A stretch of 64,000 nucleotides of DNA. Source: Leucoraja erinacea. Lineage: Eukaryota. The notes below the pieces were generated by a model. That model did not search any database. It was not told the DNA's origin and worked only from the letters and a program-made list of their open reading frames with translations. The position numbers and the translations under genes are program-made. The stretch is from positions 5,456,001 to 5,520,000 of the forward strand of contig NC_073391.1 of the NCBI RefSeq assembly GCF_028641065.1. The letters run 5' to 3'. Each line of letters begins with the position of its first letter. Within the stretch, counting starts at the first letter, position 1. Of the stretch, positions 1 to 61,440 are shown in pieces.

Positions 1-690
1 TGGTGAAGTCCTGCCAGAACTCCAGTACAGGTTTTTGTTGTAGTTGAATGTGTAGTTCCTGTGTTTGAGCAGTTTCTTCCCACTTCTTGATGTTCGTCAG
101 GTATGTTCCCTAGTGGACATGCGATGGAATGCTGTCATCATGTTGACAGTGCTGTCTGATCCAGGCTGAGCAGTGGTCTTCCCAATTCTGCAATCCAGGC
201 CCAGCAGTGGTCTTTTAATGGCCATGTCCAGGACCACTGGGAACCATGACTGTGGGTTTAGTCCACTGTATTTTGCGTAGTACCCAACTGATGAGGCCCT
301 AGTACCTATTGATGAGGTAGAAGAAGGGGAGAACATAGAGATTAGACTACCCCCCCCTCCTCAATACGTGGGAATGGATCCATAGCCGCTGCCTTGAGTT
401 TGGTTTCATGCGACATACATTGGTACGTGGCGCTTTAATTAGAATATAAGGAAGTTGATATACTGGTGACCATATTGCTTTGTAATCTCAGCAAATATTT
501 TGGTTTAAATGTTCGTTTACAGTGTTTAGCTCACCTGATAGGTAAGTTACTGATGGTGAAACATGTTTGACGACATACGGTTACCAATTGTTAACTAAAT
601 TGTCACATGATATCGATTTTATTCCGCCCAATTGGTTTGGTATATGTCACCACTGTGATGTTGTTAGTTTATAAACGAACATGCAAAACT
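1..690 (-). mobile_element. DIRS-type retrotransposon fragment (RNase H/methyltransferase to YR N-terminal region), degenerate, runs off window start
   Basis: Colinear similarity to 36760-37685 and 41940-42755 of the complete DIRS copies in this window. Confidence 0.85.
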
Positions 691-2793: not shown

Positions 2794-4689
2794 TGGAGGA
2801 CCTCTTTACTCCTATATTCACATTTTCATAGAACATTGAACAGTATAGCACAGAAACAAGCCCTTCGACCCCCAATGTCTGTGCCAAACATGTGCCTCTG
2901 CCTGCATTCGATCCACATCCCTGCTTTCCTTGCACATCCATGTCCATCGATCATCATCGGCCACCCTTCCCTAATAATGTTAGTGGAATCTCAAACGTTG
3001 GCCTATTTTCTTCTCATCCATCTCTATGGCCTTTCACATTAGCAAAAACAGAAGAGCTGCTCGAGGAACCCAATGGATCTGACAGCATTTCTGGAGGGAA
3101 ATCAGAGCTGGTTGACATTGCAGGTTGAGATGCTTCATCTACACTGAAAAAGAAGAGGGGAGGTAGCCAATATATTGGGGTATGGGAGGGGGAGGGCAAG
3201 AGCTAACACAATCAGGTGCAGAGGGAACGAAGGGTAAATATGTTTTGTACCTATTCTAGCCACAAGTTCCAGCATCTGTATCTCTTGTGCCTTATTTCAC
3301 CAGGACTGGCTTGCGGAAGTTGACATTAAGTTGACATTGGCAAGAACACATCAGAATTCTTTACGCGCTCTCTGCTTTTCTGCTCTAGAAAATCTTCCAT
3401 GTAGACGTCGGGATTAATAGACTTAGTGAAATCAATAATGTGCTGGTGTATAAGTAGCAGTGTTAAGGGCCTGTCCCACTGTACAAGTTTACCCAAGAGC
3501 TCTCCCGAGTTTAAAAATAAATCAAACTCATCGTAAGTACGTAGAATAGTAAGATTAAACGAGAACTTACCAGTTTGAAGTTTGATCTGTATTTTATGAG
3601 GAGTTACGGTGAGGGATTTCGTGAAGAACCCCGCTTCCACGCATGCGTGTCATTCTTCAAAGCAGCGGTGTGAGGTCACAGGAACCTATAATGATCTAAC
3701 ATAGTAAGATTATCAAAGAGATACCAGTTTTTGATATGATCATAAGAGGGTGGGAGCGGAGGGCACGAAATCCCTCACCGTAACTCCTCATAAAATACAG
3801 ATCAAACTTCAAACTGGTAAGTTCTCGTTTAATCTTACTATTTTACTTCGGAGTCACGTGAGTGACTTCGTGAAGATTTCAAAGCTCTGTGACCTCATGC
3901 CGTGGAACGAGTCCATGCTTCACAACTGCCTTGGGTATTGGGAGAGAGCATCATTAGTAATTTTAAAACACAATTATACAAAGAGTTATGTGGTATAATG
4001 AAAAAATTATATAACATTTTTTTAAATTTGAGAATCATAGCCCTGTAACCTTTCGGGCAATTATTTTGTTGGACATAAAATGTCTTCTTAATACAAATGA
4101 TGGCTCCAAAATTTAACTGGTTTATTATAAAAACCTGTGGAAAAACCCTTTTTGAATGACCATCCTGCCATTCTGAGGATTTGGTCTGTGGGTACCTGTA
4201 CAAATTTTTGCTGCGGATGTTGCTGCAGCCCTGGTGGAATGAGAGTTAAAACATTAGTGTCATTTTTAGGACCTATTTGAGCCACCTAATATAGTTTGAG
4301 TCGTGACCCTTTCATGCGGTTTCTTTTAAGAGATAAACAACTCCATTTTCTGACCTCGAATGTTCTTAGTATATTCCATATATTGTTAGATGTGTCTTGC
4401 TATACACCGTTGTAGTTGAATTATCCCTAGTACCCCATTGATGGGGCCGAACGGGGGAAAAACATCACCCTATGGCTTTGTTACATAACAATGCCAAGCT
4501 GGTTTTAGAATTTTAGTAAATAATCTTGGAGCTAATGATTGCCCCTATTGTAAGCTCTATTGCCAAAGTTCCTCTTTTGAGTCAATGCCTGCCATATAGA
4601 AAACCCCCGTACTGACGGTACTGGTCCCTTGCGGTCGTTGCAGCCGGTCAACCCCACTCTAACGCCCTCAATTCTGGGCACTCCTACTT

Positions 4690-4742
4690 ATATGGTCCTT
4701 AGCTAAGGAACATATAAGACATTAAAACTGATGATAACAGCT
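4690..4742 (-). pseudogene. Second, more diverged U2 snRNA fragment (about nt 40-90)
   Basis: Minus strand ctgttatcatcagttttaatgtcttatatgttccttagctaaggaccatat aligns to U2 stems IIa/IIb and to the adjacent copy. Confidence 0.75.
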
Positions 4743-4754
4743 ATTATAGATTTT

Positions 4755-4850
4755 ATTTAATATATGGTCCCTAGATAAGGGACGTATCAGATATTAAACT
4801 GATAAGAACAGATACTACACTAGGTCTTAGCCAAAAGGCCTAGAAGCGAT
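4755..4850 (-). pseudogene. RNU2: U2 snRNA-derived sequence, nt 1-96, truncated just before the Sm site
   Basis: Minus strand ATCGCTTCTAGGCCTTTTGGCTAAGACCTAGTGTAGTATCTGTTCTTATCAGTTTAATATCTGATACGTCCCTTATCTAGGGACCATATATTAAAT is near-identical to the vertebrate U2 5' half; GTAGTA branch-pairing motif intact. Confidence 0.95.
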
Positions 4851-5007
4851 CATTGTAACTAAAACCCTGGTACTCACATACTGGTCCCTTGTAGTAGATT
4901 GCAGCCAGACAACTGCCAAGTCCTTTGCTGCTGAAAAATGAATTTTCTCACCGTGCTGGAGCGAAGTTGGGCACAGGTGTTTTCCTCCTCCGGGAATCGA
5001 TGTGCCC

Positions 5008-5232
5008 ATGCTGCTCCTGCCGTTGCCAGCTCCTGCCGTTGCCAGCTCCTGCCGCAACCTGCGCTCCTGCAGCTGTCAGTGCTCCTGCAGCTGCCGGCTG
5101 CCACTGCTGCTGCCCGTACTCCTGCAGCTGCCCGCACTCCTGCAGCTGCCCGTACTCCCGCAGCTGCCGGCTGCCACTGCTGCTGCTGCCGACTGCCGAC
5201 TGCCGCTGCTGCTGCTGCCGCTGCCGCTCCTC
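5008..5232. repeat. GC-rich low-complexity/tandem tract (18-bp CTGCAGCTGCCCGTACTC-like units and CTG/CCG runs) inside DIRS copy A
   Basis: Visible tandem units; source of several overlapping spurious ORFs. Confidence 0.8.
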
Positions 5233-6702
5233 CGCGGTTCTCCCGCCGGCCTTCTGCAGCTTACATGGACCCGGTCCATGTCTGCACCTAGAAGGTAAGT
5301 TGAAGGAAACGCAGGGTCTCTTACCTGCTGTTCCCGACTTTCCTTCTCCCGCTGGTGACCGTCGTTCCCTCCGTTGCGGGTTGGAGCCGCTCGGACCAAA
5401 CCCCGGTGTTCACGGGCCTGGTCCTTCGCGGCAGTTCCGCAGCCGGTAACCCCGGCTGTTCCTATCCTGGTGCCTACCTTTTGAAGAAGGTTTTCGTCCC
5501 CAACGTCCCGTTCCGACTCCATAAGTGCCGCTGCACTCGCTGAGCGTTTCGAGCCCCGGTACCGCTGGTCCGTGCTGTCTGTCCCGCAGCCTCTGCGCTG
5601 GCTGCTAGCGACTGGTCCCAAGTCAGTCTCGCTTGAGACTGGCATACGGGACCTCTTTACTTTGCTTCCCGCCCGGCCGAGAGGTGAATTTTGCCGGTGC
5701 GGGAGCAAAGTCGGGCACAGGTTGTTCCCCTCCAGGGAACTCGTGCTGTTGCTGCTGCCGGCTGCTCGCCCTCCACGGGTCTCCCCGCCAGCTTTCCGCA
5801 GCCACCTAAAAGTAAGTAGTAAAAGAGGGAAACGCAGAGTCTCTTACCTGCTGTTCCCGACTTTCAAATTCTCCCGCTTGGGGAACGCCGTTCCCCCTGT
5901 GTGACTCGTTGCAATGCGTGTAGCGATATGACACGCATGCGTGGAAGCGGGGTTCTTCACGAAGTCACTCACGTGACTCCGAAGTAAAATGTACGTAGCG
6001 GGTACGTCAGAGCTCAGGACGCCTCTTAGCAGCTTGTAAGGCTAATGACAGGTACTCGGGAAATGAGGTAAGCTCGGGAAGATTTTTCAACAGTGCGAAG
6101 AGTGTCCACGAGAGTCCCCGAGTACCTACGAACGGCTATTACCGTAATTCTCCGAGGTCTAATCAGGGGAAACTCGAGAGAACTTGTGAATTACCTCGTA
6201 CAGTGGGACAGGGGGCTTAACTGTGGGAGTGGGCTTGCTCTTGGTGTTTGGAATCCTGCTGTTGTCACCATTCGTCTGAGCTGGCCTCAAACAATGACAC
6301 TTGCTCAGGGTTGAGATCGGTTTTAACTTGTAATGAGCTCACACTAATGAGGCTTAACATCTTGTGCAAGATGGCAGCTTTCATTTTAGTTTACTTTATA
6401 TTATCACATGCGCCGTCGGTACAGTGCATAGTTTTTATTGCATGTGATTCAGTCACAGAAAAGACTGTATATGATTACAATCAAGCCACTACAGTGCACA
6501 GATAAAGGATAAAAGGTGCAAGATAAAGTACAATTAAAGATAATTCAAAGATCTTCAATGAGGTAGATGGGAAGTCAAGACTGCACCAACTGGTGAGAGG
6601 ACAGTTCAGTTGCTGATAACAGTTGTGAAGAAACTTTAAAATGGAATGAGATAGGATATTAAAAATGGAATGATATTAGACTATAACATGTTCCATGACT
6701 GA

Positions 6703-7032
6703 AAGCCCTGTCCCACGGTCCGAGTTCATGCCAAGAGCTCTCCCGAGTTTGCCCTGATTCAAACTCGGAGATTTACGGTAATGGCCACTCGTTGGTACTC
6801 GGGGCTCTCGTGGACATTTTTCAACACGTTGAAAAATCTTCACTAGTCTTCCCGTGCTTACCTGCCGTTAGCGAGTCTTCCCGAGTACCTGCCGTTAGCC
6901 TTACGAGCCGCTAAGAGACGTCCCCGAGCTCCGACGTACCCGCTATGTTCATTCTCCGTGCTTACCACGAGTTAGATTTTTTTTTAACTCGGGAGAGCTT
7001 TTGGAATGAACTCGTACCGTGGGACAGGGCTT
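6703..7032. mobile_element. Harbinger-like MITE (inverted relative to 3466-6217 and 7511-7809)
   Basis: TIR AAGCCCTGTCCCACGGT / ACCGTGGGACAGGGCTT, TGA/TAA flanks. Confidence 0.85.
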
Positions 7033-7510: not shown

Positions 7511-7809
7511 AAGCCCTGTCCCACTGTAGGAGTTAAAAAAAAAAAATCAAACTCGTGGTAAGCACGTAGAATGAACGTAGCGGGTACATTGGAGCTCGGG
7601 AACATCTCTTAGTGGCTCGTAACGCTAACGGCAGGTACTCGGGAAACGGGGTAAGCGCGGGAAGACTCGTGAAGATTTTTCAACATGTTGAAAAATGTCC
7701 ACGAGAGCCCCGAGTACCGACGAGCGGCCATTACCGTAAATCTCCGAGTTCGAATCAGGGCAAACTTGGGGAGAACTCTTGAATGAACTCGTACAGTAGG
7801 ACAGGGCTT
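7511..7809. mobile_element. Harbinger-like MITE
   Basis: TIR AAGCCCTGTCCCACTGTA / TACAGTAGGACAGGGCTT, TAA/TTA flanks. Confidence 0.85.
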
Positions 7810-33893: not shown

Positions 33894-35480
33894 CCTAATC
33901 ACAGTTATCAAAATACTTACTAACGATATGTTATAAAAACTAGTTTTTCTTGTACACAACAGAAATATTCCTAATAGGGAATATTTAGTTTGTAAGGTAA
34001 TATTTAGTTGAACAAATAATAATACTGTTAAGCAAGCCAAATGCTTACTGAAGGCATTTGGAAAGTAAATGCCAGACAAATATGCCAGGTCTATTTAAAT
34101 GTTCATAGACTTTTGCATTTTAATTACTTCTGAGAGCAATTTCATCTACACAATTGGATTTCAGTTTGATTCATAAAAAGTAAATGATGTACTGACCAGA
34201 AATGAAACCATTTGACCTTTAGTAAGTCAAAACTAACTTCCAATGATTGGAATAGAAAAAAAACATGAAAAGATTCTATTAAGATTGAAAGCCTTTTCAG
34301 AGAACATAACATGATGTTATGCAGAAAGAATTTTAAATATTTTAAAGGCAAGTTGTTGATAAAATATTTACCGAAACTGAACTTTGGAACTGTTGGAAAA
34401 GAAATTGCTGCAGACAAGGAAGTAGTTTAATAATTTCAAAGGTTTGATAACGATAACAGTGATTCATAATAAATCACTGCAAAGCAGGGGCTAAACTGGA
34501 ACTGCACCTTCAGACTATTTAAAGAATGCATTTTATTATTTTTTTCTGGCCACGCTGAGTTGCAACTGTTCATTATTTTGACCCCACCTTCATCCGACAG
34601 CCTTTTTCTAAACAGGATCTAATTTAACGTTTAAAATTGCTTCCATTACAAGAGTCCTTACTGGGAACCAAACACTGGTATAGCAACTGAAATTGGCAAA
34701 CACAGGCCTTTTGACCCAACTTGCCCACACTGGCCAACATGTCCCAGCTACGCTACTCCTGTCTGCATTTGGTCCATATCCCTCCAAACCTGTCCTATCC
34801 TATCCATGTACCTGTCTAATTGTTTTTTAAACATTGGGATAGTCTCAGCCTCCACTATCTCCTCTGGCAGCTTGTTCCATACACCCACCACCTCTTTGTG
34901 CAAAAAATCTACCCCTCAGATTCCTATTAACTCTTTTCCCCTTCACCTTAAACCCATGTCTTCTGGTCTTCGATTCACCTAAATTCAAGTTCATAGAGTT
35001 ATACCTGCAAAAACCAGCCACACGACACCACTCGTACAGTCTCCATAGCCTGTTATGCCTTGGCAATTCAATTGTTCATTCAGATTATCTTAAGTCTTGA
35101 AGATAAACACAAAATGTAGCGTGACTCAGCGGGACAGGCGGCATAGAATGAAAGGGTGACGTTTCTGGTCGAAACACTTCCTCAGTGTTGGTTCATAACT
35201 TCACCAAGCCCTCAGGCAAAGCGGCTCAGATTGCAAGCACCCTCTCGATTAATGAGAAATCTTCTGCAGTTCCCCTCCAAACTGCTAATTCCTCACTAAT
35301 GCCTTCTGGTTTTAGATACCAAAACCATGAGGAATAACCTCTCACTATCTTACCTTTGGGCCACAGAGTCCTACTTTAATCAGAGGAACATGACATGTCA
35401 TCTCGTGCTGATTTGGTCGCACTCCAGCTTCTCAATCAGGAGATTGTGTTGAAGATCCAACTCTGGACACTAGCCACAAA

Positions 35481-38400
35481 AATAGTAAGATTAAATGAGA
35501 ACTTACCAGTTTGAAGTTTGATCTGTATTTTATGAGGAGTTACGATGAGGGATTACGTGAAGAACCCGTCCAGCACGCATGCGCAACATACTTCAAAGCA
35601 GCAGTGTGGAATCATAGAAACACACAATAATTGAAATAAACATAGTAAAGACAAGGAGAACTAAGTTATCAGTTGATCTCTATAATTGAGGGTGGGAGCG
35701 GAGGGCACGTAATCCCTCATCGTAAGTCCTCATAAAATACAGATCAAACTTCAAACTGGTAAGTTCTCGTTTAATCTTACTATTTTACTTCGGAGTCACG
35801 TGAGTGACTACGTGAAGATTTTAAAGCTCTGTGATTTCAAACCGTGTAACAGTTCATACTTCACTCGCTGCCGAAGTCATTCGAGGAAGGAAATATGTTA
35901 TCATAATCAACCATGAATCTGTTTGTAAAACAATAATGGTGTTATTAACAATAACAAGACCAAAATGCTCCCCCGGGCTTAAATTATATATTTTTGCAGA
36001 TTCTAATACTTTTTCTGCAAACGATACAGGTTCTGCCAGCGGCTTGTTATAAAAGTTTGGAACGTATACTCCCTAGACCACCCCGCTGTAGCCAGGATGT
36101 GGTCCATAGGCACGTCCATCCTCTTAGTCACCGATGTGGATGCTGCCCTGGTGGAGTAAGATTTATACACGTTAGTATTTACTCCAGCAACTCCCAGTAC
36201 CTGCTTGAGCCACTTGAGATAGTTTGGCTCATCACCCGACCATGAGGTTTCTTGTGGCTGACCCATAAGGCTTTTTCTCTCCCTCAGGGATTTCTTATTG
36301 TGTCGATGTAGTTCAATAAGTGAGTCATGACACATAACCGTGGTTCAGGTGGGTATGCCCGGAATTCCATGACTGGACCTGATGTTCCTGGTCTGCTCTG
36401 TTTGACCAGCCCCTGAATGGTAAATGTGACATGGTCTGGTGTTATAACCATATTGTCCAATCGTAGTAGATGGAGGAACTCGATTCTTTGTGCTGAGACA
36501 AGGCCATCAGCATGACCGTCTTCAGGGTGGGCTGTTCCAGGGTGAGGGACCTGGCTGGTGACCATCCCCTAAGGTACGTCAGGACCACACTGACATCCCA
36601 GATTTGGGTGTCTGGGGGATTAGAGTTGAATATGCCTCTCCTGAATTTGATCACCAGTGGGTGGTACCCTATGGCCTGTTGTCCTGGTGCCTGAGTTAAG
36701 TAGGCTGACAGAGCACTTCTGGCTGTATTGATGGCGCAGTAGCTGAGTCCTTCATTGTGGTGAAGACCTGCCAGGAACTCCAGTACAGGTTTTGTTGTAG
36801 TTGAATATGTAGTTCCTGTATTTGAAACAGTATCTTCCCACTTCTTGATGTTCGCCAAGTATGTTCCCTAGTGGATATGCGATGGGATGCTGTCATCGTG
36901 TCGATAGTGCTGTTTGACAATCCAGGCCCAGCAGTGGTCTTCCCAATTCTGCAACCCAGGCCCAGCAGTGGTCTTTTCAAATCTGCAACCCAGTAGTTTA
37001 ATTTATCGTGGCATGGGTGGCTTATGCCTGAAACTGGGTGAGTTGATAAGTCTGGGCTACTGGGAAAATCATTAGGGTTTTGATGACCATGTCGAGGACC
37101 ACAACTGTGGGTTTAGTCGGGTACTATCAAAATACTTGAAGCAGAGTCCATCTGTATTTTGTGTAGTACCCGACTGATGAGGCCGTAGTACCTGACTGAT
37201 AAGGTAGAAAAGGGGAGAACATAGAGATTAGATAGATCCCCCCCCCCCCCCCCCCAGTTCAGCGGGAATGTATTCATTGCCACTGCCTCAAAGTTTGGTT
37301 TCATGCGACATACATCAGTACGTGGTGATTCAATTGAAATACAAGGAAATCGATATCTGGTGTTCCATATTGCTTTGTAATTTCAGCAAATACTTCAGTC
37401 TGAAGAAGGGTTTCTGCCCGAAACGTTGCCTATTCCCTTCGCTCCATAGATGCTGCTGCACCCGCTGAGTTTCTCCAGCATTTTTGTGTACCTTTGGTTT
37501 AATATGTCTGTTTACAGTATTTAGCTCACCTGGTAAGTAAGTTACTGATGGTCAAATATGTTTGACGACATACGGTTACCAATTGTTAAATAAATTGTCA
37601 CATGATATCGATTTTATTCCGCCCAAGTGGTTTGGTATATGCCACTACTGTGATGTTGTTAATTTATAAACGAACATGCAAAATGGTGCACTACTGAACA
37701 ATATGCTTTTGCCAATAGAACGTACTCAATATTTCCAACTAGGTTTTATGCCCAGTGTCTATAGTGATGACGACTCCAGATTAGTCCATTTGCCACCATG
37801 TTCTGGGTATGGGTTATTTTGTTTAAACACTAGCACCTTAGCTCTAATGGAAAGGTTCAAGTTAAGTAGCTGGTAATGCTGCTACTAATTCCCAATTACT
37901 CTTGCCACTTTGTTGAATGGTTGGTTGATTGTTACCATTAATTGTTACAGGTTGTGCCATACGCTGACTCTCCTTATGGCAATGTTATAGATGAGTGGAT
38001 AGAGTTAATTGAATACCAGATAGTCAATAGTTGTGGATGGTGTCAACGTAGATTTATCTGGATAGTATGACAGAGCCCAGGCTAAATAAGTTTTAGTAGC
38101 TAATGCTGCTGATTTAGCTATTTCCATGGATTTGTCTGTCGTTAATATCATAGAGACATGCCATGACGATATGTTCCTTAATAGTGTCAGGGCTGGTTTG
38201 AATATCTGGAAACAGTTTTGGCTCATATTAGCCATTGTCAATAATTTATACTGCCATAGTTACCCCATCCAGGTAAATTGTGGTATCTCTGAAAATCTTT
38301 TATGAATGGCTACTGAATAGTATGCATCTTTTAAGTCGATGTCTACCATAAAGTATCCTAGGAAATCCATGGTTAGCAGTTACAAGTTTCCATAAAATGT

Positions 38401-40447
38401 GTATACCTGGTGAAAATACTCAAGTGGTTAAGTCAATGATGGTGCGACATTCACCATCTTTGGGTTTTTTGGTACCAAAGGTTCATATTAGGCTTCTTTA
38501 ATAATAATAATACATTTTATTCATGGGCGCCTTTCAAGACTCTCAAGAACACCTTACAAAATTTAGTAAACAGAATACAAAACATGTAAGCGGAATGAAA
38601 CAAAATAAAAAATAACGACAAAAAAAAATAAAAAATAGTAAAGACATCAACAATACACAATTCAAAGACACAATTCAAAGACACAATTCAAAGAGAGAGC
38701 AGCGACAACTAATCATGCCATATATACTTTATGACCCTTTGTATATCTTCTCCAGTTAGCTAGTCCCTCATGTACTTTTTTTTTTTAGTGGGAGGGTATT
38801 TCTTAATTCAATTTTTATCCTTGAATACTTCTGGTATATAACTACCAAGTGTGATAGTTCTTCATGTTTCCAACCCAGGTGTGATTTCCTTTCACCTTTT
38901 ATGTGATGGTAGGAACCATACTTATCTGTCTTCACTGTTGTTTAGTGGTGTGTTCATTTCTTTGGTTTCTGGTTCCTTGTCTGCAGGGATGGTGTTGTTG
39001 GGGGGTGGTGCATTTTCCATGGGGCCCGCTCTGGACCCTGGCCTGAAAAGGCTTACGGGGGTTGGCATGCGGTCCCCGAGCTTTCACCAGTAACATTAAG
39101 TAGACGCCTACTGGTGGACGCGTGGAGGTTCTGCTGTCTGGTTTTGTGTGGTGCTCATTCCAGGCCCTGCCCTCTTGATGCCGAATATCTTGGACACTTC
39201 GTCCAGTTTTTTAGGCTTGGTTTGGTAACCTTGCCAGATAGCAGGATCTGTGGTTGTGAGGTCGGCGTTCTCACAGTCCTGTGAAATTTCTAGGTTGAGG
39301 GCAGGTTTTATGACTTCCTTCGAGAAGTTGCGGAGCATACTGTGAAACAGTAGGGTCAGGTGTTTAGCCATACTACCCTGCCCCTCTGGAATGAGCATGC
39401 GAAAATGATAGCCGACGTCAGGGGTATCAAATGCAATTTAAGATATTTGGGTTTTTTAAATGCCCTGCTCAATGTACCCCCAATAATGGTGGGCACTTTG
39501 AGTAAATGTAATTTAGGGGAGGCGTGATGAAATCCAACGCCTCATGACTACCTGTCTTGGAGAGGTTTTTTGGAAAGAACAGGTAGTAAGCTGGCCGTCA
39601 GTTGAGACTGAAAAGCCATCTCGCTAGTGGTGTAGCCACATAGCGGCCACACCCAGCAGCTCTTCCTGATCCTGTACCTCAAGCATACTCCCAATGTTGT
39701 TCAGCCAGTGACCCCTCTTCTTGACCAGCCCAGCCCTGGTCGCCATCGATCCCTCGATAATGGAGATGGCCAGTGCTGTTAGTGCACTGGAGCAGGAGTG
39801 TTATGCTCCCTTGGCGAGCTTGCCCCAGCTCCCGAGGCAAGTCTCGCTGGAGTTTTTTAATCCATGACCTTACTCTAGGCTTGGCGAACAGACACTTACT
39901 TGCTCTCGGGCGGTAGTTTGAAGTGCCGGTTCCATCTTCTGTGTCTGTCTCCAGCCCGAGGTTTGGTGCTGACTTTGCTGCTAGAGGCTGCCTGCCGTTT
40001 TCGGGCGGCATCTGCGGTTCTCGGGCGGCGAGTCTCCTTGTCGGGAGTATGCAGGGGTTACCGGACGGTTTTTGAGTTTCCCTCCAGTCCGCTGCTGTTG
40101 GTCAGACAGCTGTTAGCAGACTCGGCATTGGCTCAGTACCCTGACTGTGGACCGCAGCGTGTGCGGTCCAGGTGCCGTCTCTCGCCCCCTCCACTGACGG
40201 AACGCTCCTTCACTGGAGTCGAACGGGGGCCACTTCCCTCTGTTCTGCTTTGCTCTCTCCAGTTTCCCCTGGAGCAACAAACTCGAACCTGTGGGTAATT
40301 ACATACCTAACGGTCCATTCTTTCAGGCTTGTAGCAGGAGCGCCTGCACTCCCGTTCGTCGCTGTTGCATCCGCGTGAACACTCAAGTCGCGCATGCATG
40401 CTGGACGGGTTCTTCACGTAGTCACTCACGTGACTCCGAAGTAAAAT
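35481..40447 (-). mobile_element. DIRS retrotransposon copy B, complete ends, degenerate ORFs, with Penelope (~37394-37493) and L2-tail (~38500-38720) insertions
   Basis: ITR and ICR (~35706-35818); YR motifs YSTRAASTS..ILATAGW; RT DLKDAYYS-like; AAT at both junctions. Confidence 0.93.
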
Positions 40448-41165
40448 CAATGTTGTTTCTCCAGTTTGATGTAATTGGAAATTTAGGTTTGTATTAGGTA
40501 GACAAAAATGCTGGAGAAACTCAGTGGGTGAAGCAGCATCTATGGAGTGAAGGAAATAGGCAACGCTTCGGGTTGAAACCCTTCTTCAGACTCTTGTATT
40601 GCTCTTTTTTCTGTGCTGCATGTTTGAAGTTTGTTTTCTTACAATGGCGTATAATAGTAAGATTAAACGAGAACTTACCAGTTTGAAGTTTGATCTGTAT
40701 TTTATGAGGAGTTACGATGAGGGATTATGTGAAGAACCCGTTCAGCACGCATGCGCGGCATACTTCAAAGCAGCGGTGTGGAATCACAGATAGACACAGT
40801 TATTGAAGTAAACATAGTAAAGATAAGGAGACATCAGTTTATGAATTTGACCCATATTATTGAGGGTGGGAGCGGAGGGCACGTAATCCCTCATCGTAAC
40901 TCCTCATAAAATACAGATCAAACTTCAAACTGGTAAGTTCTCGTTTAATCTTACTATTTTACTTCGGAGTCACGTGAGTGATTCCGTGAAGATATCAAAG
41001 CTCTGTGATTTCAAACCATGTAACAGTTATTACTACATCCCTGCCGAAGTCTTTGAGGGAGGAAGTGTGTTATCGTAACCAACCAATGAATCTGTTTGTA
41101 GAAAAACACAATGGTATTTTTTAACAATAACAACAAAGAAATTAAATTGCTCCCCTGGGCTTAAA

Positions 41166-42083
41166 TTAAATATTTGCAGTCTGTAAAATCTTTCCTGCAA
41201 ATAAAACAGGTTTTGCCAACGGCTTATTATAAAATTTCTGAACGGTCTTTCCCCCCCACCATCCTGCTGTAGCCAGGATGTTGTTTATAGGCACGTTCAT
41301 TCTTTTAGCCATCGACGTGGATGCTGCCCTGGTGGAATGAAATTTGTATATGTTCGTTTTTATCCCAGCAGCTTTTAGCACCTGCTTGAGCCATCTCGAA
41401 ATGGCTTGTCACCTGACCATAAGGTTTTTTTATGACTGACCCAGAAGGCTTTTCATCTCCCTCGAATATTTTGGTTGTGTCTATGTAGGATAATAGGGTC
41501 ATGGCACATAACCGTGTTTCTGGCGGGTAAGCCCGGAATTCCACAAATGGATTAGGTGTTCCTGGTCTGCTCTGTTTGATCATTCCCTGGATAACAACAG
41601 AGATCTGGTCTGGAGCTGTGAGCATGGAGTCCAGTCGCAATAGGTGTGGTGACTGGACCCTCTGTACAGCTACAAGTGCCATCAACATGAGTGTTTTGAG
41701 CATAGATGGTTACAGGTTGAGGGATCTGGCTGGTGGCCATCCCCCGAGGTATATCATGACCACACTGACATCCCATATATGGGTGTACCTTGGTTTAGGG
41801 GGTTGGAGTTGTAAATACCCTTCATTAGTTTGATCACCAGCTGGTGGGACCCCATGGCCTGTTGTCCTGGAGCTGGTTTTAAATAGACAGGCAGGGCAAT
41901 TCTAGCTGCGTTGATGGCTCTGTAGCTGAGTCCTTCATCGTGGTGAAGGTTCGCCAGGAATTCCAGTACGTTGGTAAATGTAGCGGTTGAGTAGGTGGTC
42001 CCTGTATCCAAGCAGTACTTCTCCCATTTTTTGATGCTGGACAAGTGCTGTTTTTTAGTGGATGTTCGGAGGGATGCTGACAT
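41166..42083 (-). pseudogene. DIRS tyrosine recombinase remnant (SAM-like N-domain plus catalytic HSTR..AGW..FY)
   Basis: ORF pieces 41754-42083, 41305-41703 and 41166-41381 joined by frameshifts. Confidence 0.9.
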
Positions 42084-42161
42084 GGTGTCGACGGTTTGTT
42101 ATGATAATCCCAGTCCCAGAAGTGGTTTGTGCAGAATCTGCAACCCAGGAGTTTGATTTTT

Positions 42162-42721
42162 TCATGGCACGGGTGGCTTGTGCCCGACACTGGGTGTTAA
42201 CAACTCTGGGCCACTGGGGAATACCATCGGAGTTTCAACCACCATGTCATGGAGTATTGGGAACCATGGCTGTGTAGGCCAGTCGGGTACTATCAAAATA
42301 CCTGAAGCAGAGTTCATTTGTACTGTGCGTAGTCCCCAACTGATGAGGTAGAAGGGAGGAAATGCATAGAAGAAGAATTTCCCCAATCCAGCGCGAACGC
42401 ATCTACCGCTGCTGCCTCAGGGTCTGGTTCCCAAGCGACATACATAGGTACCTGGTGATTTAGCCTTGATGCAAATAAATCGATATATAGCGTGCCATAT
42501 TGCTTAATAACTTTTGTGAAAAGATTTTGGGGTTTTAACATCCATTCGATTTTGTCCTTAAATTTACGTGACCTGGTGTCTGCCACTGTATTTAGCTTAC
42601 CTGGTAGGTAAGTTACTGATAGCCAAATATGTCTTTGGACATACCATTGCCAAATTGTGTTGACCAACTTGTCGCATGATACCGATTTTATGCCGCCCAT
42701 ATGGTTAATGTAGGCCACCAC
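42162..42721 (-). pseudogene. DIRS RNase H end and DNA N6-adenine methyltransferase-like domain remnant
   Basis: IDLFASRLN..VDAFALDW..YAFPPF..LIVPDWPTQPWF motifs typical of the DIRS MT domain. Confidence 0.88.
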
Positions 42722-45700
42722 CGTAGTATTATCTATTTATAACCGTACATGCAAGTGATGCATATTTATGCATATGCTTTTAAACCATAAAAGTCACCCA
42801 ACATCTCTAGATAATTAATGCCCAGTGTAAGTGGTAACGGTGATTCTGGGTTAGTCCTCTACTATATAGTTGCTCCCCAGTCTTGAGCACTGGCATCTGT
42901 TTGGATAACTGACGTAGGGTTAGTGATGATAATAGGCTGAAACTATGTCAAACGTTGATATTACTTCAGTGGGTAACTTCATGAAACGATCATAATGACC
43001 TGTATGTCGTTTTTGGTACAAAGGTCCGAATTATGTAGCCGGAAATGCTGCTACCATTATCCCAATTACTCTGTTACTTGTCGAGTAGTTGGTAGTTTGT
43101 TGACCATTAAATTGTTGCATGATTGTGCCAATTCAACTATGTTGTCTTTTGGCAATGTTACAGTCACGTAGACTGAATTAATTATGAAGCCCAAGTAGTC
43201 CATGATAGTGGATGGCTTCAACTTAGATTTATCTGGATGTAAGATAACCCCAGGGTTTCGAATAACTGTTTGGTAGCTGAACAGCTAACATAGTCAAATT
43301 CATGGTCTTGCCTACCATTTAGGATATCATCAAGATATGCCATGACAATATGTTTTTGTCTTCTGAATATTGCCAGAGCTGGTTTTAGTGTCTGGGTGAC
43401 ACTCTTGGGCTGATGTGAACCCATTGGGTAACGCTTTAAACTGCTATAGATGCCCCATCCAGGTAAATTTCAGGTATCTGCGATGATCCTTGTGAATGGT
43501 ACTAAATAGTAAACATCTTTAAGATGAATGCTTGCCATGAAGTATCCTTTGGAATTTAGTTGTTTGGCAGTAACAACCGGTTCCATTTTGAAATGTATAT
43601 ACTTAACAAACATATTTAGTGAAGTTAAGTCAATGATGATGCGACATCCACTTTTTTTTTTTTTTTGGGTTTAGTGAATATATTTGATACGAATTGCAAG
43701 GGTTCAGGTTTTTCCCATGATACCCTTTGTAATTATTCTCACCAGTTCAGCTTGTCCCTCTTGTTTCTTTAACGGAGAGGGGAAAAAATACCCTCTGGGG
43801 TGAATGTTGAAGTGGTGGCAATTTTTCTAGTATGAATTGTATTTGTATTCACTAATGCCATTGAGTATATAGTGATCACTCGTGATAGACTCCCACGTGT
43901 TAGTATTACTCTATATACTGGTAGGAACCAGACCCACCTACCTCCATGGTTAGGGGTATTCTTCTGTTTCCTTCCGGTCCAACGAGTGTTGCACGTCGTC
44001 TGACGTGGCGGTGACGTTGGGGGGTGGCACATTTTCCATGGTGTCCGCTCTGGGCCCTGGTCTAAAGAAGATTTTCGGTGATGGAATGCGGACCCCGAGC
44101 TTTCATCAGTCTGATATGGTAGACGTTGACTGATGGACGCGATGGGGTGCTGCTGCGTAGGAATTACTGTTTTTGGTTACTCGTCCCGGCCCTGCCCTCA
44201 TGAGCCGAAAATTTTTGTAAAACCTCTTGCATGTCCTTGATATGCTTTGTGAGGTTTTTGCCAAAGAGCAGTGGGTCTGGCTCAGTGGCTGGGGTATGCA
44301 CAACCCCGCAATGTAGCATTTTATGGCAGGTCTTATGACTTGTTTACGAAGGTTGTGGTCTCTCCGTATTTGTCCATGGAACGAGGAAAAAACAATGTGA
44401 TGGCTGTCGTCCGGCTTTTAACGGCCTCCTGCACGTGGGGTTCCACGGTGCTGTCCTCCACACCTAGCAGCTCTTCCTGTTCCTGCACCCCTTGCATACT
44501 CCCGAGATCTTCAGCCATTGCCCCAGTTCTTGACCAGCCCAGTCCTGGTCACCAAAGCTATCCTCTGGAAAGGAGGAAGCAATGGACAGTGCACAAGGCA
44601 CTGTGGAGGGAGTGCCTGACCCTCCTCTGCGAGAGTGCCCCTCCTGGGGTGCACCTCGCTGGAGCTCCTGCGCCAAGAACCGCTCCATGCGACTCATGCG
44701 GCTGTCTCCCCCCCGGACGGGTGGAATGACGTTCCTTCCGATAAGTCGGAGCCACCGGCCGGACGCCTCCGTGGCGTTACTTCCAGCCCGCTGCTCAGGT
44801 GCTAGCGGGGCTGGGCTCAGCACGGTGTCGGGATAGCGGAGCGCCAGGTAAGCGGTCCTACTGCCTTGATGCTGCACCCCCCAGATAGAACGCTCCTCCG
44901 TGGAGTCGAGCGGTTGACAGGTTTGTTGCAGAGCTTTTCTTCTCTGCCGGACAGCAGAAGGCTCCCTGTGAAAGAAAAACCCAACGTCAGCTTACCTGAC
45001 GGTCCGTTCTTTCACCTCCATAGCGGGAGCGCCAGACTCCTGCTGTGCCGCTGTTGCTCTGCTGGAGTAATGCTACGCATGCGTGCTGAACGGGTTCTTC
45101 ATGGAATCACTCACGTGACTCCAAAATAAAATTGTAGTGATTTCTGTGCCAAAAAATAATGCCATAGAATTCCAAACAGATATTTCTTGATTGTGTTGAT
45201 ATTGGGCCTATGTTCTCTTGAATTTGAAAGAATGAGGGGAAAGTTCATTGAGTTATACAAAGTTCTTTCAGGACCTGACAAGGTATATGAAATTCAGATG
45301 AGTTTAGAGATACAGGTCCATTGGCTCACTGAGTCTGTGTCGACCAGCGATCACCCATGCAGTAGTTCTATCCTGCACAGTAGGGACAGATTTACCAAAG
45401 ACAATTAACCTACAAAACTACACGTCTTTGGAATGTGGAAGGAAACCGGATCACCCAGAGAAAACCCACACGGTCACCAAAAGAACGTACAAACCTCTGC
45501 ACAGACAACAGTTAAGATCGAATCCGGACCCTGGTGCTGTAAATCAGCAACTCTACCACTGCACCACCGTGCCGCCCCTAAATGTTGATGTTTCTCCTGA
45601 CATCAACCACATGCACCAATCCCTCTATTCCAGAAGAGGAGAGCAGTAACCCAACGGGTCAGGCAGCATCTCTGCAGAACATGAAGCGGTAATGTTTTTG

Positions 45701-60581: not shown

Positions 60582-61440
60582 GTGGTGAGAGTGAGGGTGA
60601 GAGTGAGGGTGAGAGTGAGGGTGAGTGANNNNNNNNNNNNNNNNNNNNNNNNNNNNNNNNNNNNNNNNNNNNNNNNNNNNNNNNNNNNNNNNNNNNNNNN
60701 NNNNNNNNNNNNNNNNNNNNNNNNNNNNNNNNNNNNNNNNNNNNNNNNNNNNNNNNNNNNNNNNNNNNNNNNNNNNNNNNNNNNNNNNNNNNNNNNNNNN
60801 NNNNNNNNNNNNNNNNNNNNNNNNNNNNNNNNNNNNNNNNNNNNNNNNNNNNNNNNNNNNNNNNNNNNNNNNNNNNNNNNNNNNNNNNNNNNNNNNNNNN
60901 NNNNNNNNNNNNNNNNNNNNNNNNNNNNNNNNNNNNNNNNNNNNNNNNNNNNNNNNNNNNNNNNNNNNNNNNNNNNNNNNNNNNNNNNNNNNNNNNNNNN
61001 NNNNNNNNNNNNNNNNNNNNNNNNNNNNNNNNNNNNNNNNNNNNNNNNNNNNNNNNNNNNGGTGAGGGTGAGAGTGAGAGTGAGAGCGAGGGTGAGGGTG
61101 AGGGCGAGAGTGAGAGTGAGAGTGAGGGTGAGGGGGTGAGGGTTGGGGTTGAGAGTTGAGGTTGGGGTTAGGGTGAGGGTTGAGAGTTAGGGTGAGTGGT
61201 GAGGGTGAGGGTGAGGGTGAGGGGTGAGGGTGAGAGCGANNNNNNNNNNNNNNNNNNNNNNNNNNNNNNNNNNNNNNNNNNNNNNNNNNNNNNNNNNNNN
61301 NNNNNNNNNNNNNNNNNNNNNNNNNNNNNNNNNNNNNNNNNNNNNNNNNNNNNNNNNNNNNNNNNNNNNNNNNNNNNNNNNNNNNNNNNNNNNNNNNNNN
61401 NNNNNNNNNNNNNNNNNNNNNNNNNNNNNNNNNNNNNNNN
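60582..61440. repeat. (GGTGAG/AGTGAG)n hexamer array flanking two assembly gaps (N 60629-61060, 61240-61440)
   Basis: Directly visible. Confidence 0.95.

What the first reader, a model, noticed from the sequence alone, without database searches (positions are those of the whole stretch)
4601..4906. U2 snRNA cassette carried inside a DIRS retrotransposon
Seen: U2 nt 1-96 (4850-4755) lies in the element's sense strand, starts at U2 nt 1 and stops right before the Sm site. The GTAGTA branch-pairing motif, stem IIa and a fully paired stem IIb (GTCCCT/AGGGAC) are retained. A second diverged U2 piece follows (4742-4690). The cassette is bracketed by diverged ~45-bp direct repeats (4601-4645, 4862-4906), with no PSE, poly(A) or TSD evident. 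An upstream TACTACAAGG (4896-4887) can pair in cis with CCT-AG-TGTAGTA, and that CCT includes positions that differ from canonical U2. I know U2 links for Keno/Utopia LINEs and SINEU, but not for DIRS. Inference: either template-switch capture, or a retained spliceosomal-RNA mimic affecting splicing, localisation or priming of the element RNA.
Basis: partly seen in the sequence, partly recalled or inferred. Interest (0 to 1): 0.85.

Follow-up and report, generated by a model that had tools for sequence, protein, structure and literature searches.

The report
U2 snRNA fragment inside dead DIRS
A skate retrotransposon that has lost its genes carries the first 96 bases of the host's U2 splicing RNA, most likely picked up by accident when its reverse transcriptase jumped between RNA templates; nothing shows that the fragment has a function.

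Summary
Rfam finds U2 at 4850-4683 (-) with 106 bits. U2 nt 1-96 are nearly canonical, start exactly at nt 1 and lack the Sm site. A 77%-identical partial copy (nt 22-90) follows at 4755-4689.

The cassette lies in sense inside a 2.45-kb non-autonomous DIRS-like element (3541-5990). This element shares only its termini with two fuller DIRS in the window.

The bracketing repeats are real but are not an insertion duplication. A third copy lies at 5453-5398, and all three belong to a tandemly duplicated leader.

There is no target-site duplication (TSD) and no A-run. The cis pairing with GUAGUA is at chance level. No U2 was found in the two other DIRS here or in 40 DIRS-like loci from elsewhere.

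Best reading (0.55): passive RNA-level capture by template switching during the rearrangement that made this element.

The run index hints that the stretch is multi-copy. The scan has noted this nowhere else.

The parts
3541..5990 (-). Non-autonomous DIRS-like element (the host of the cassette). It has the termini and 3' region of a DIRS but a rearranged interior with no long ORF.
   Evidence: 3540-4331 matches 35481-36253 and 40648-41435 at 69-70%; 5882-5990 and 5819-5990 match the 5' ends of those elements; terminal and internal inverted repeats, 5954-5990 against 3876-3840 at 37/37 and 5928-5990 against 3653-3591 at 89%; only broken frames.
4755..4850 (-). U2 snRNA nt 1-96: stem I, branch-pairing GUAGUA, stems IIa and IIb. 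It ends just before the Sm site.
   Evidence: Rfam RF00004, 106.4 bits, model position 1 at 4850; the 101-nt stretch folds at z -4.0 with stems IIa and IIb; stem I forms in the 168-nt fold.
4689..4755 (-). Diverged partial tandem copy of U2 (nt 22-90). GUAGUA is lost through a 3-nt deletion and substitutions. Stem IIa has two broken pairs. Stem IIb is kept within a 14-bp near-perfect palindrome (4687-4718).
   Evidence: 54/70 identical to copy 1. (4687-4718 self-inverted, 93.75%). (fold).
4851..4860 (-). 10 nt (AGTTACAATG) between repeat R2 and U2 nt 1, origin unknown. The base next to U2 nt 1 is G.
   Evidence: Read; alignment A1.
4861..4913 (-).
4600..4655 (-).
5398..5453 (-).
   Evidence: 77% over 57 nt to R3, E about 1e-6.
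4656..4688 (-). 33-nt spacer between the second U2 piece and R3, origin unknown.
   Evidence: similarity to the sequence upstream of R1 is at chance (35% of shuffles reach it); no Rfam match.
5205..5900 (-). Tandemly duplicated leader units: 5900-5745 matches 5374-5205, and 5760-5676 matches 5022-4930 (which lies below these coordinates). Each unit carries a conserved GT..AG motif.
   Evidence: 72%, E 5e-20 and 2e-8; alignment A2.
5013..5228 (-). GC-rich minisatellites inside leader unit 2.
   Evidence: TRF periods 16, 18, 36, 73 and 3.
4417..4523 (-). Remnant of the Dam-like methyltransferase region of DIRS pol, with internal deletions.
   Evidence: weak but collinear tblastx hits to 42523-42331 and 37219-37153; the matching ORF of the fuller element hits PF05869 at E 0.006, below the cut-off; homologue P0006 carries PF05869.

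Best explanation
The U2 piece is a passive passenger. An RNA copy of the host's U2 snRNA served as an extra template while a reverse transcriptase, most likely the DIRS enzyme, copied DIRS RNA. In the sense strand this gives leader ... R2 | U2 nt 1-96 | older U2 nt 22-90 | spacer-R3 | pol remnants. The cDNA entered U2 at an internal site just 5' of the Sm site. It ran to the 5' end of U2 (nt 1), where a jump is forced, and landed back on DIRS leader RNA at the 3' edge of repeat R.

The same kind of jump explains the duplicated leader units and the large deletions that made the element non-autonomous. The rearranged element then integrated as one unit.

Shown: the U2 identity and its boundaries; sense orientation; absence of TSD and poly(A); three R copies; the duplicated leader; absence of U2 from other DIRS. 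Inferred: the template switching itself, which enzyme did it, the order of events, and that the cassette was already in the element when it integrated.
For: The boundary falls exactly at U2 nt 1 and the fragment is in sense with the element. This is required for capture at the RNA level and is unlikely for a random piece of DNA.

U2 is complete at its 5' end and cut at its 3' end, with no A-run and no TSD. This argues against insertion by LINE target-primed reverse transcription.

The element interior is a patchwork. It has two leader units at 72% identity, three R copies at 77-78%, and deletions in pol and the recombinase.

The unit1/unit2 junction has the same layout as the U2 junction: the end of R, then 10-24 nt, then the start of a new unit.

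U2 is absent from the two fuller DIRS in the window and from 40 DIRS-like loci, 207 kb, from other organisms, so it is sporadic rather than a DIRS feature.

Precedent: retroviruses package snRNAs and patch host small RNAs such as 7SL into non-homologous recombination junctions by template switching (PMC4997597). LINE reverse transcriptases add U1/U2 sequences by template switching (PMC4494074).
Against: No second copy of the element could be examined, so it is not shown that the cassette travelled with the element.

The two U2 pieces differ by 23%, and R2 and R3 by 22%. U2 copy 1 differs from the consensus at only 3 of its first 66 nt. One simultaneous event therefore does not explain everything. 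It needs two captures at different times, or templates that already differed.

No clear microhomology is seen at the outer junctions. Only UAA(A) at the copy 1/copy 2 junction qualifies.

Template switching by a DIRS reverse transcriptase has, to my knowledge, not been demonstrated.
Confidence: 0.55

Rival explanations
1. The U2 piece entered this one copy after the element had integrated. It came in as a U2 cDNA, inserted by a LINE enzyme or used as filler during repair of a DNA break. It has nothing to do with DIRS replication.
For: Only one copy is seen, and no other copy could be fetched. U2 copy 1 is far less diverged (3 of 66 nt from the consensus) than the repeats around it (22-28%), as expected of a late arrival. 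3'-truncated snRNA pseudogenes are known in mammals (PMC4494074, discussion).
Against: There is no TSD and no A-rich tail. The cassette is two tandem U2 pieces of different age, which is hard to get from one insertion. Its position exactly between two leader repeats matches the element's other rearrangement junction. Small sequencing runs hold 38-47% of the sampled 31-letter words of 3900-5900, which suggests the stretch is multi-copy as a whole.
Confidence: 0.22
2. The U2 5' domain is a retained functional module of a non-autonomous DIRS family. It could act as a mimic that binds U2 snRNP proteins or pairs with the element's own branch-like UACUAC. It could also be a donated splice acceptor: U2 nt 38-50, UCUGUUCUUAUCAG, reads like a polypyrimidine tract followed by AG. 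Either way it would affect splicing, nuclear retention or packaging of the element RNA.
For: Copy 1 keeps GUAGUA and stems I, IIa and IIb intact, while the neighbouring copy has decayed. All three differences from the consensus lie in nt 1-29. The leaders of these DIRS carry conserved GT..AG motifs (alignment A2). The minimum-free-energy fold of the 171-nt and 351-nt contexts does pair CUACUAC with GUGUAGU.
Against: The pairing is no better than chance, since 74% of shuffles do as well, and the larger folds have z of only -1.1 to -1.2. The piece lacks the Sm site and stem-loops III/IV, so by established snRNP biogenesis it cannot form a core snRNP. The second copy lost the motif and stem IIa, as under neutral decay. 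U2 is absent from 2 + 40 other DIRS. The intactness of copy 1 is equally explained by youth.
Confidence: 0.1
3. It is a U2 gene or a DNA-level U2 pseudogene fragment that the DIRS happens to lie next to, or a misassembly that joins a U2 locus to a DIRS.
For: U2 genes are multi-copy, and repeats invite assembly errors.
Against: The U2 piece is flanked on both sides, within 10 and 33 nt, by copies of the element's own leader repeat. The upstream 60 nt are that repeat, not a snRNA promoter. The Sm site and 3' half are absent. The boundary at nt 1 points to an RNA origin.
Confidence: 0.03

Closest known systems
Host small-RNA patches in retroviral recombinants (7SL-containing recombinant; tertiary-template 'patch repair'), reviewed in PMC4997597
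   Same: A packaged host small RNA is copied in sense into a non-homologous recombination junction of a retroelement genome by template switching. No TSD or poly(A) surrounds the patch.
   Different: Here the element is a tyrosine-recombinase (DIRS-like) retrotransposon of a skate and the RNA is U2. Packaging of U2 by DIRS particles is not known.
LINE-mediated chimeric snRNA retrocopies (U6-L1; U1/U2-Alu), as cited in PMC4494074 and PMC4476161
   Same: The snRNA starts at its nt 1 and is fused in sense to the 5' side of retroelement sequence by a jump of the reverse transcriptase.
   Different: Those end in poly(A), have TSDs and carry the snRNA at the very 5' end. Here the U2 piece is internal, needs a second jump back to the element, and has neither a tail nor a TSD.
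SINEU of crocodilians (PMC4494074)
   Same: U2-derived 5' pieces were added repeatedly, giving tandem U2-derived segments of different age. There is no internal promoter.
   Different: SINEU are short poly(A) SINEs moved by Tx1 LINEs and were reported only from crocodilians. This is a DIRS-type element with inverted termini.
Keno and Utopia, LINEs that target U2 genes (PMC4640811)
   Same: A retrotransposon physically joined to U2 sequence.
   Different: They insert into U2 genes at one site; the downstream U2 flank starts at nt 39. Here U2 runs unbroken through nt 38/39, and the boundaries are nt 1, about 97/22, and 90.

Membership tests
U2 snRNA (Rfam RF00004), sequence family | Covariance-model score at or above the gathering score | tested here: met
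   106.4 bits against 46. The score comes from model positions 1-97. The '3' half' of the alignment is a duplicate of nt 22-90.
Functional U2 snRNA gene | Sm site and stem-loops III and IV | tested here: not met
   No AUUUUUG after nt 96. No U2 match in 4590-4692 or 4856-4960 even at E up to 10.
Functional U2 snRNA gene | Proximal sequence element about 55 nt upstream, and a 3' box | tested here: inconclusive
   The upstream 60 nt are the element's leader repeat R2. No skate PSE consensus was available for a scan.
DIRS-type retrotransposon (host element) | Inverted termini plus an internal region complementary to them | tested here: met
   5954-5990 against 3876-3840 at 37/37; 5928-5990 against 3653-3591 at 89%. 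The same termini occur on two fuller elements.
DIRS-type retrotransposon (host element) | RT/RNase H/methyltransferase pol and a tyrosine recombinase | tested here: inconclusive
   This element holds only remnants, and its pieces give no Pfam hit. The fuller relatives give matches below the cut-off: Phage_int_SAM_1 at E 0.013 and Dam at E 0.006. One homologue carries PF05869.
LINE-mediated snRNA retrocopy or SINEU | Poly(A) or A-rich tail, and target-site duplication | tested here: not met
   No A-run of 5 or more in 4860-4560. The longest shared word across the junctions is 5-6 nt. The 54-nt repeats are leader repeats present three times.
Keno/Utopia footprint in U2 | Junction at U2 nt 38/39 | tested here: not met
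   Copy 1 is continuous across nt 38/39. The target site is taken from PMC4640811.
Captured module of a multi-copy element family | Same junctions in several copies at different sites | not testable with these tools
Flanking ORFs and the R pattern found nothing. The only hint is indirect: small runs hold 38-47% of the words of 3900-5900.

The most novel reading that the evidence does not exclude
A high-copy, non-autonomous DIRS family of skates carries the 5' domain of U2 snRNA as a conserved module. It would be kept because it gives the element RNA a splicing-related property, for example a ready-made polypyrimidine-AG acceptor or a dock for U2 snRNP proteins, in a DIRS lineage whose leaders already hold conserved splice-like signals. 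This would be the first snRNA-bearing tyrosine-recombinase retroelement, and a case of a transposon co-opting spliceosomal RNA sequence.
Probability: 0.08. Interest if true: 0.8.

Novelty: new variant of a known kind. Interest (0 to 1): 0.4.

Why it matters
How DIRS elements replicate is poorly known. A U2 fragment that starts at nt 1, in sense, inside a rearranged DIRS is a natural record that their reverse transcription switches templates and can reach nuclear small RNAs. The same holds for retroviruses and LINEs.

If the cassette proves to be shared by many copies, it would be the first snRNA-carrying DIRS family. It would also serve as a marker for dating that family. My searches found no paper linking DIRS and U2.

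Tried and rejected
1. Repeats as the 3' end of U2. I suspected that R2 and R3 were U2 stem-loop IV and that an Sm-like site lay upstream of R2. Rfam gave no U2 match in 4590-4692 or 4856-4960 at E up to 10. Rejected.

2. Repeats and downstream stretch as a LINE 3' tail (LWNSLPQ-type), which would make the cassette a U2-headed SINE. The tblastx hits had E 0.15-0.66, and the same stretch turned out to be a leader repeat. Rejected.

3. Junction at a 5' splice site. The similarity of the spacer 4656-4692 to the AAG|GTAGG context upstream of R1 is at chance, since 35% of shuffles reach it. Rejected.

4. 'SLAPRLFTKILKP' as the RT motif. It aligns instead to the methyltransferase-region ORF of the fuller element.

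5. Other copies of the cassette:
- The search for homologous proteins with ORFs beside the cassette found nothing.
- The R pattern is absent from metagenome contigs.

6. Pfam on short pieces of the element: no hits.

They were used only in closed local scripts for folding and pairwise alignment. In one search the findings tool itself widened my place query (4300-4776) to 2800-6276.

Full report
**1. Is it there?**

Yes. Rfam finds a single RNA-family match in the 64-kb window: U2 (RF00004) at 4850-4683 on the minus strand, 106.4 bits against a gathering score of 46, E 1.8e-20.

Model positions 1 to about 97 align without gaps. U2 nt 1 sits at 4850.
- Stem I, the branch-pairing GUAGUA, stem IIa and a 6-bp stem IIb are intact.
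- Within nt 1-66 the differences from the consensus are A at nt 10, C at nt 27 and U at nt 29.
- After nt 96 there is no Sm site.

The part that Rfam forced onto the 3' half of the model is really a second, diverged copy of U2 nt 22-90 at 4755-4689. It matches copy 1 in 54 of 70 columns (one search gave 81% over 58 nt). In this copy GUAGUA is destroyed by a 3-nt deletion and substitutions, and two of the six stem IIa pairs are broken. Stem IIb survives inside a 14-bp near-perfect palindrome, 4687-4718.

The flanking direct repeats are real: 4913-4861 against 4652-4600, 42 of 54 columns, score 30 against a shuffle maximum of 18.

**2. Surroundings**

The cassette lies in a discrete 2.45-kb element, 3541-5990, on the minus strand.
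- Its 3' 790 bp and its 5' 110-170 bp match, at 67-72%, the ends of two larger tandem elements at 35479-40447 and 40648-45132.
- It has terminal and internal inverted repeats: 5954-5990 against 3876-3840 at 37/37, and 5928-5990 against 3653-3591 at 89%.
- The larger elements have ORFs with Pfam matches below the cut-off: a phage-integrase SAM-like domain (E 0.013) and Dam methyltransferase (E 0.006).
- The methyltransferase-region ORF has 14 homologues, one of which carries PF05869.

This is the domain set expected of DIRS1-type elements (my knowledge of the family).

Element 3541-5990 has no long ORF. Downstream of the cassette it keeps only short, collinear remnants of the methyltransferase region and the recombinase C-terminus, with large deletions. 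It is therefore a non-autonomous derivative. U2 lies in the same sense as the element.

**3. What the repeats are**

The leader itself is duplicated:
- 5900-5745 matches 5374-5205 (72%, E 5e-20).
- 5760-5676 matches 5022-4930 (72%, E 2e-8) (alignment A2).
- Minisatellites fill 5013-5228.

In the sense strand the order is: leader unit 1 ending in R1, leader unit 2 ending in R2, 10 nt, U2 1-96, U2' 22-90, 33 nt, R3, about 55 nt, then pol remnants.

The repeats are therefore part of a reiterated leader, not a duplication made by the U2 insertion. No short TSD and no A-run flank the cassette. R is not derived from the 3' half of U2.

**4. Mechanism**

Four features point to capture at the RNA level by template switching.
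- The 5' boundary lies exactly at the first nucleotide of the U2 transcript.
- The 3' boundary is internal, just 5' of the Sm site.
- The orientation is sense.
- There is no tail and no TSD.

A reverse transcriptase that copies U2 must jump when it reaches nt 1. The landing site is the 3' edge of R. The leader unit1/unit2 junction has the same layout: the end of R, then 10-24 nt, then the start of a new unit. This suggests the same kind of event made both.

The precedent is well described. Retroviruses package snRNAs and other small RNAs, and they patch host RNAs such as 7SL into non-homologous recombination junctions (PMC4997597). LINE enzymes add U1/U2 sequences by template switching, repeatedly in SINEU (PMC4494074).

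Keno and Utopia do not fit. Their target site in U2 is nt 38/39 (PMC4640811), and copy 1 is continuous there.

One thing a single event does not explain. Copy 1 is close to the consensus, while U2' and the R copies are 22-23% apart. Either the U2 pieces were captured at different times, or the templates already differed. A later refresh of copy 1 from genuine U2 RNA is also possible.

**5. Function?**

I find no support.
- The proposed cis pairing (UACUACAAGG with the GUAGUA region) exists and appears in the minimum-free-energy folds.
- However, 74% of shuffled upstream sequences pair with that U2 segment as well or better.
- The 171-nt and 351-nt folds are no more stable than shuffles, z -1.1 and -1.2. 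Only the U2 part itself is well folded, z -4.0.
- Without the Sm site and stem-loops III/IV the piece cannot form a core snRNP (established snRNP biogenesis).
- U2 is absent from the two other DIRS in the window.
- U2 is also absent from 40 of the 80 DIRS-like loci fetched from metagenomes, 207 kb scanned.

An untested idea: U2 nt 38-50 reads like a polypyrimidine-AG acceptor, and the leaders carry conserved GT..AG motifs.

**6. What could not be done**

None could be obtained.
- The window holds none.
- The run index shows holders under two organism labels in 9 studies. Runs of 13 to 125 million letters still hold 38-47% of the sampled 31-letter words of 3900-5900. This suggests, but does not prove, that much of the stretch is a young multi-copy repeat. 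It does not say which part.
- Protein and pattern searches beside the cassette were blank.

In one search the findings tool widened my place query by itself so that it included them.

**7. Verdict**

The best explanation is a passive U2 patch acquired by template switching in a rearranged non-autonomous DIRS-like element (0.55). The rivals are a later private insertion (0.22), a functional module (0.10) and an artefact or gene fragment (0.03). The rest is unassigned.

I found no paper that links DIRS and U2. I rate it a new variant of a known kind, of moderate interest.

Noticed in passing
window 35479-40447 and 40648-45132 (-): Two larger DIRS-like elements lie head to tail, about 200 bp apart, and are about 70% alike at their ends. 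Their ORFs are broken. Pfam matches are below the cut-off: Phage_int_SAM_1 and Dam methyltransferase. Neither element holds U2.
   Followed up: partly
window 5847-5806 and 5323-5287 (-); also in the leaders at about 40300 and 45000: The best-conserved block of the duplicated leader is GAAAGTCGGGAACAGCAG|GTAAGAGAC...YAG|GT, a donor-like site followed 36-42 nt later by a polypyrimidine-AG. It is nearly identical between the two units (blastn 87% over 71 nt; alignment A2), while the rest is 72% alike. It is also recognisable in the two other DIRS. It is too short for a usual vertebrate intron. Other notes of this scan cover it.
   Followed up: partly
window 4687-4718 (-): The second U2 piece holds a 14-bp near-perfect palindrome (UAUAUGUUCCUUAG/CUAAGGACCAUAUA). 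Relative to copy 1, three changes in the left arm all increase complementarity. This could be snap-back copying or chance.
   Followed up: no
window 1-360 (-): Another DIRS fragment at the window edge. It is similar to 4417-4465 and to 37153-37219.
   Followed up: no
window 5013-5228: GC-rich minisatellites (periods 16, 18, 36, 73; a CTG run) lie inside leader unit 2. They give long spurious ORFs on both strands.
   Followed up: partly
window 3466-3547 and 5984-6213, against 6706-7029 and 7538-7806: The element's flanks are pieces of another repeat that is present nearby in uninterrupted form. This agrees with the note that an empty site can be recovered.
   Followed up: no
L035:291-363: A tRNA gene lies about 5 kb upstream of a DIRS-like methyltransferase match in a metagenome contig. 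It is the only Rfam hit in the 207 kb of DIRS-like loci scanned.
   Followed up: no
window 60629-61060 and 61240-61440: Runs of N (gaps or masked). Left untouched.
   Followed up: no
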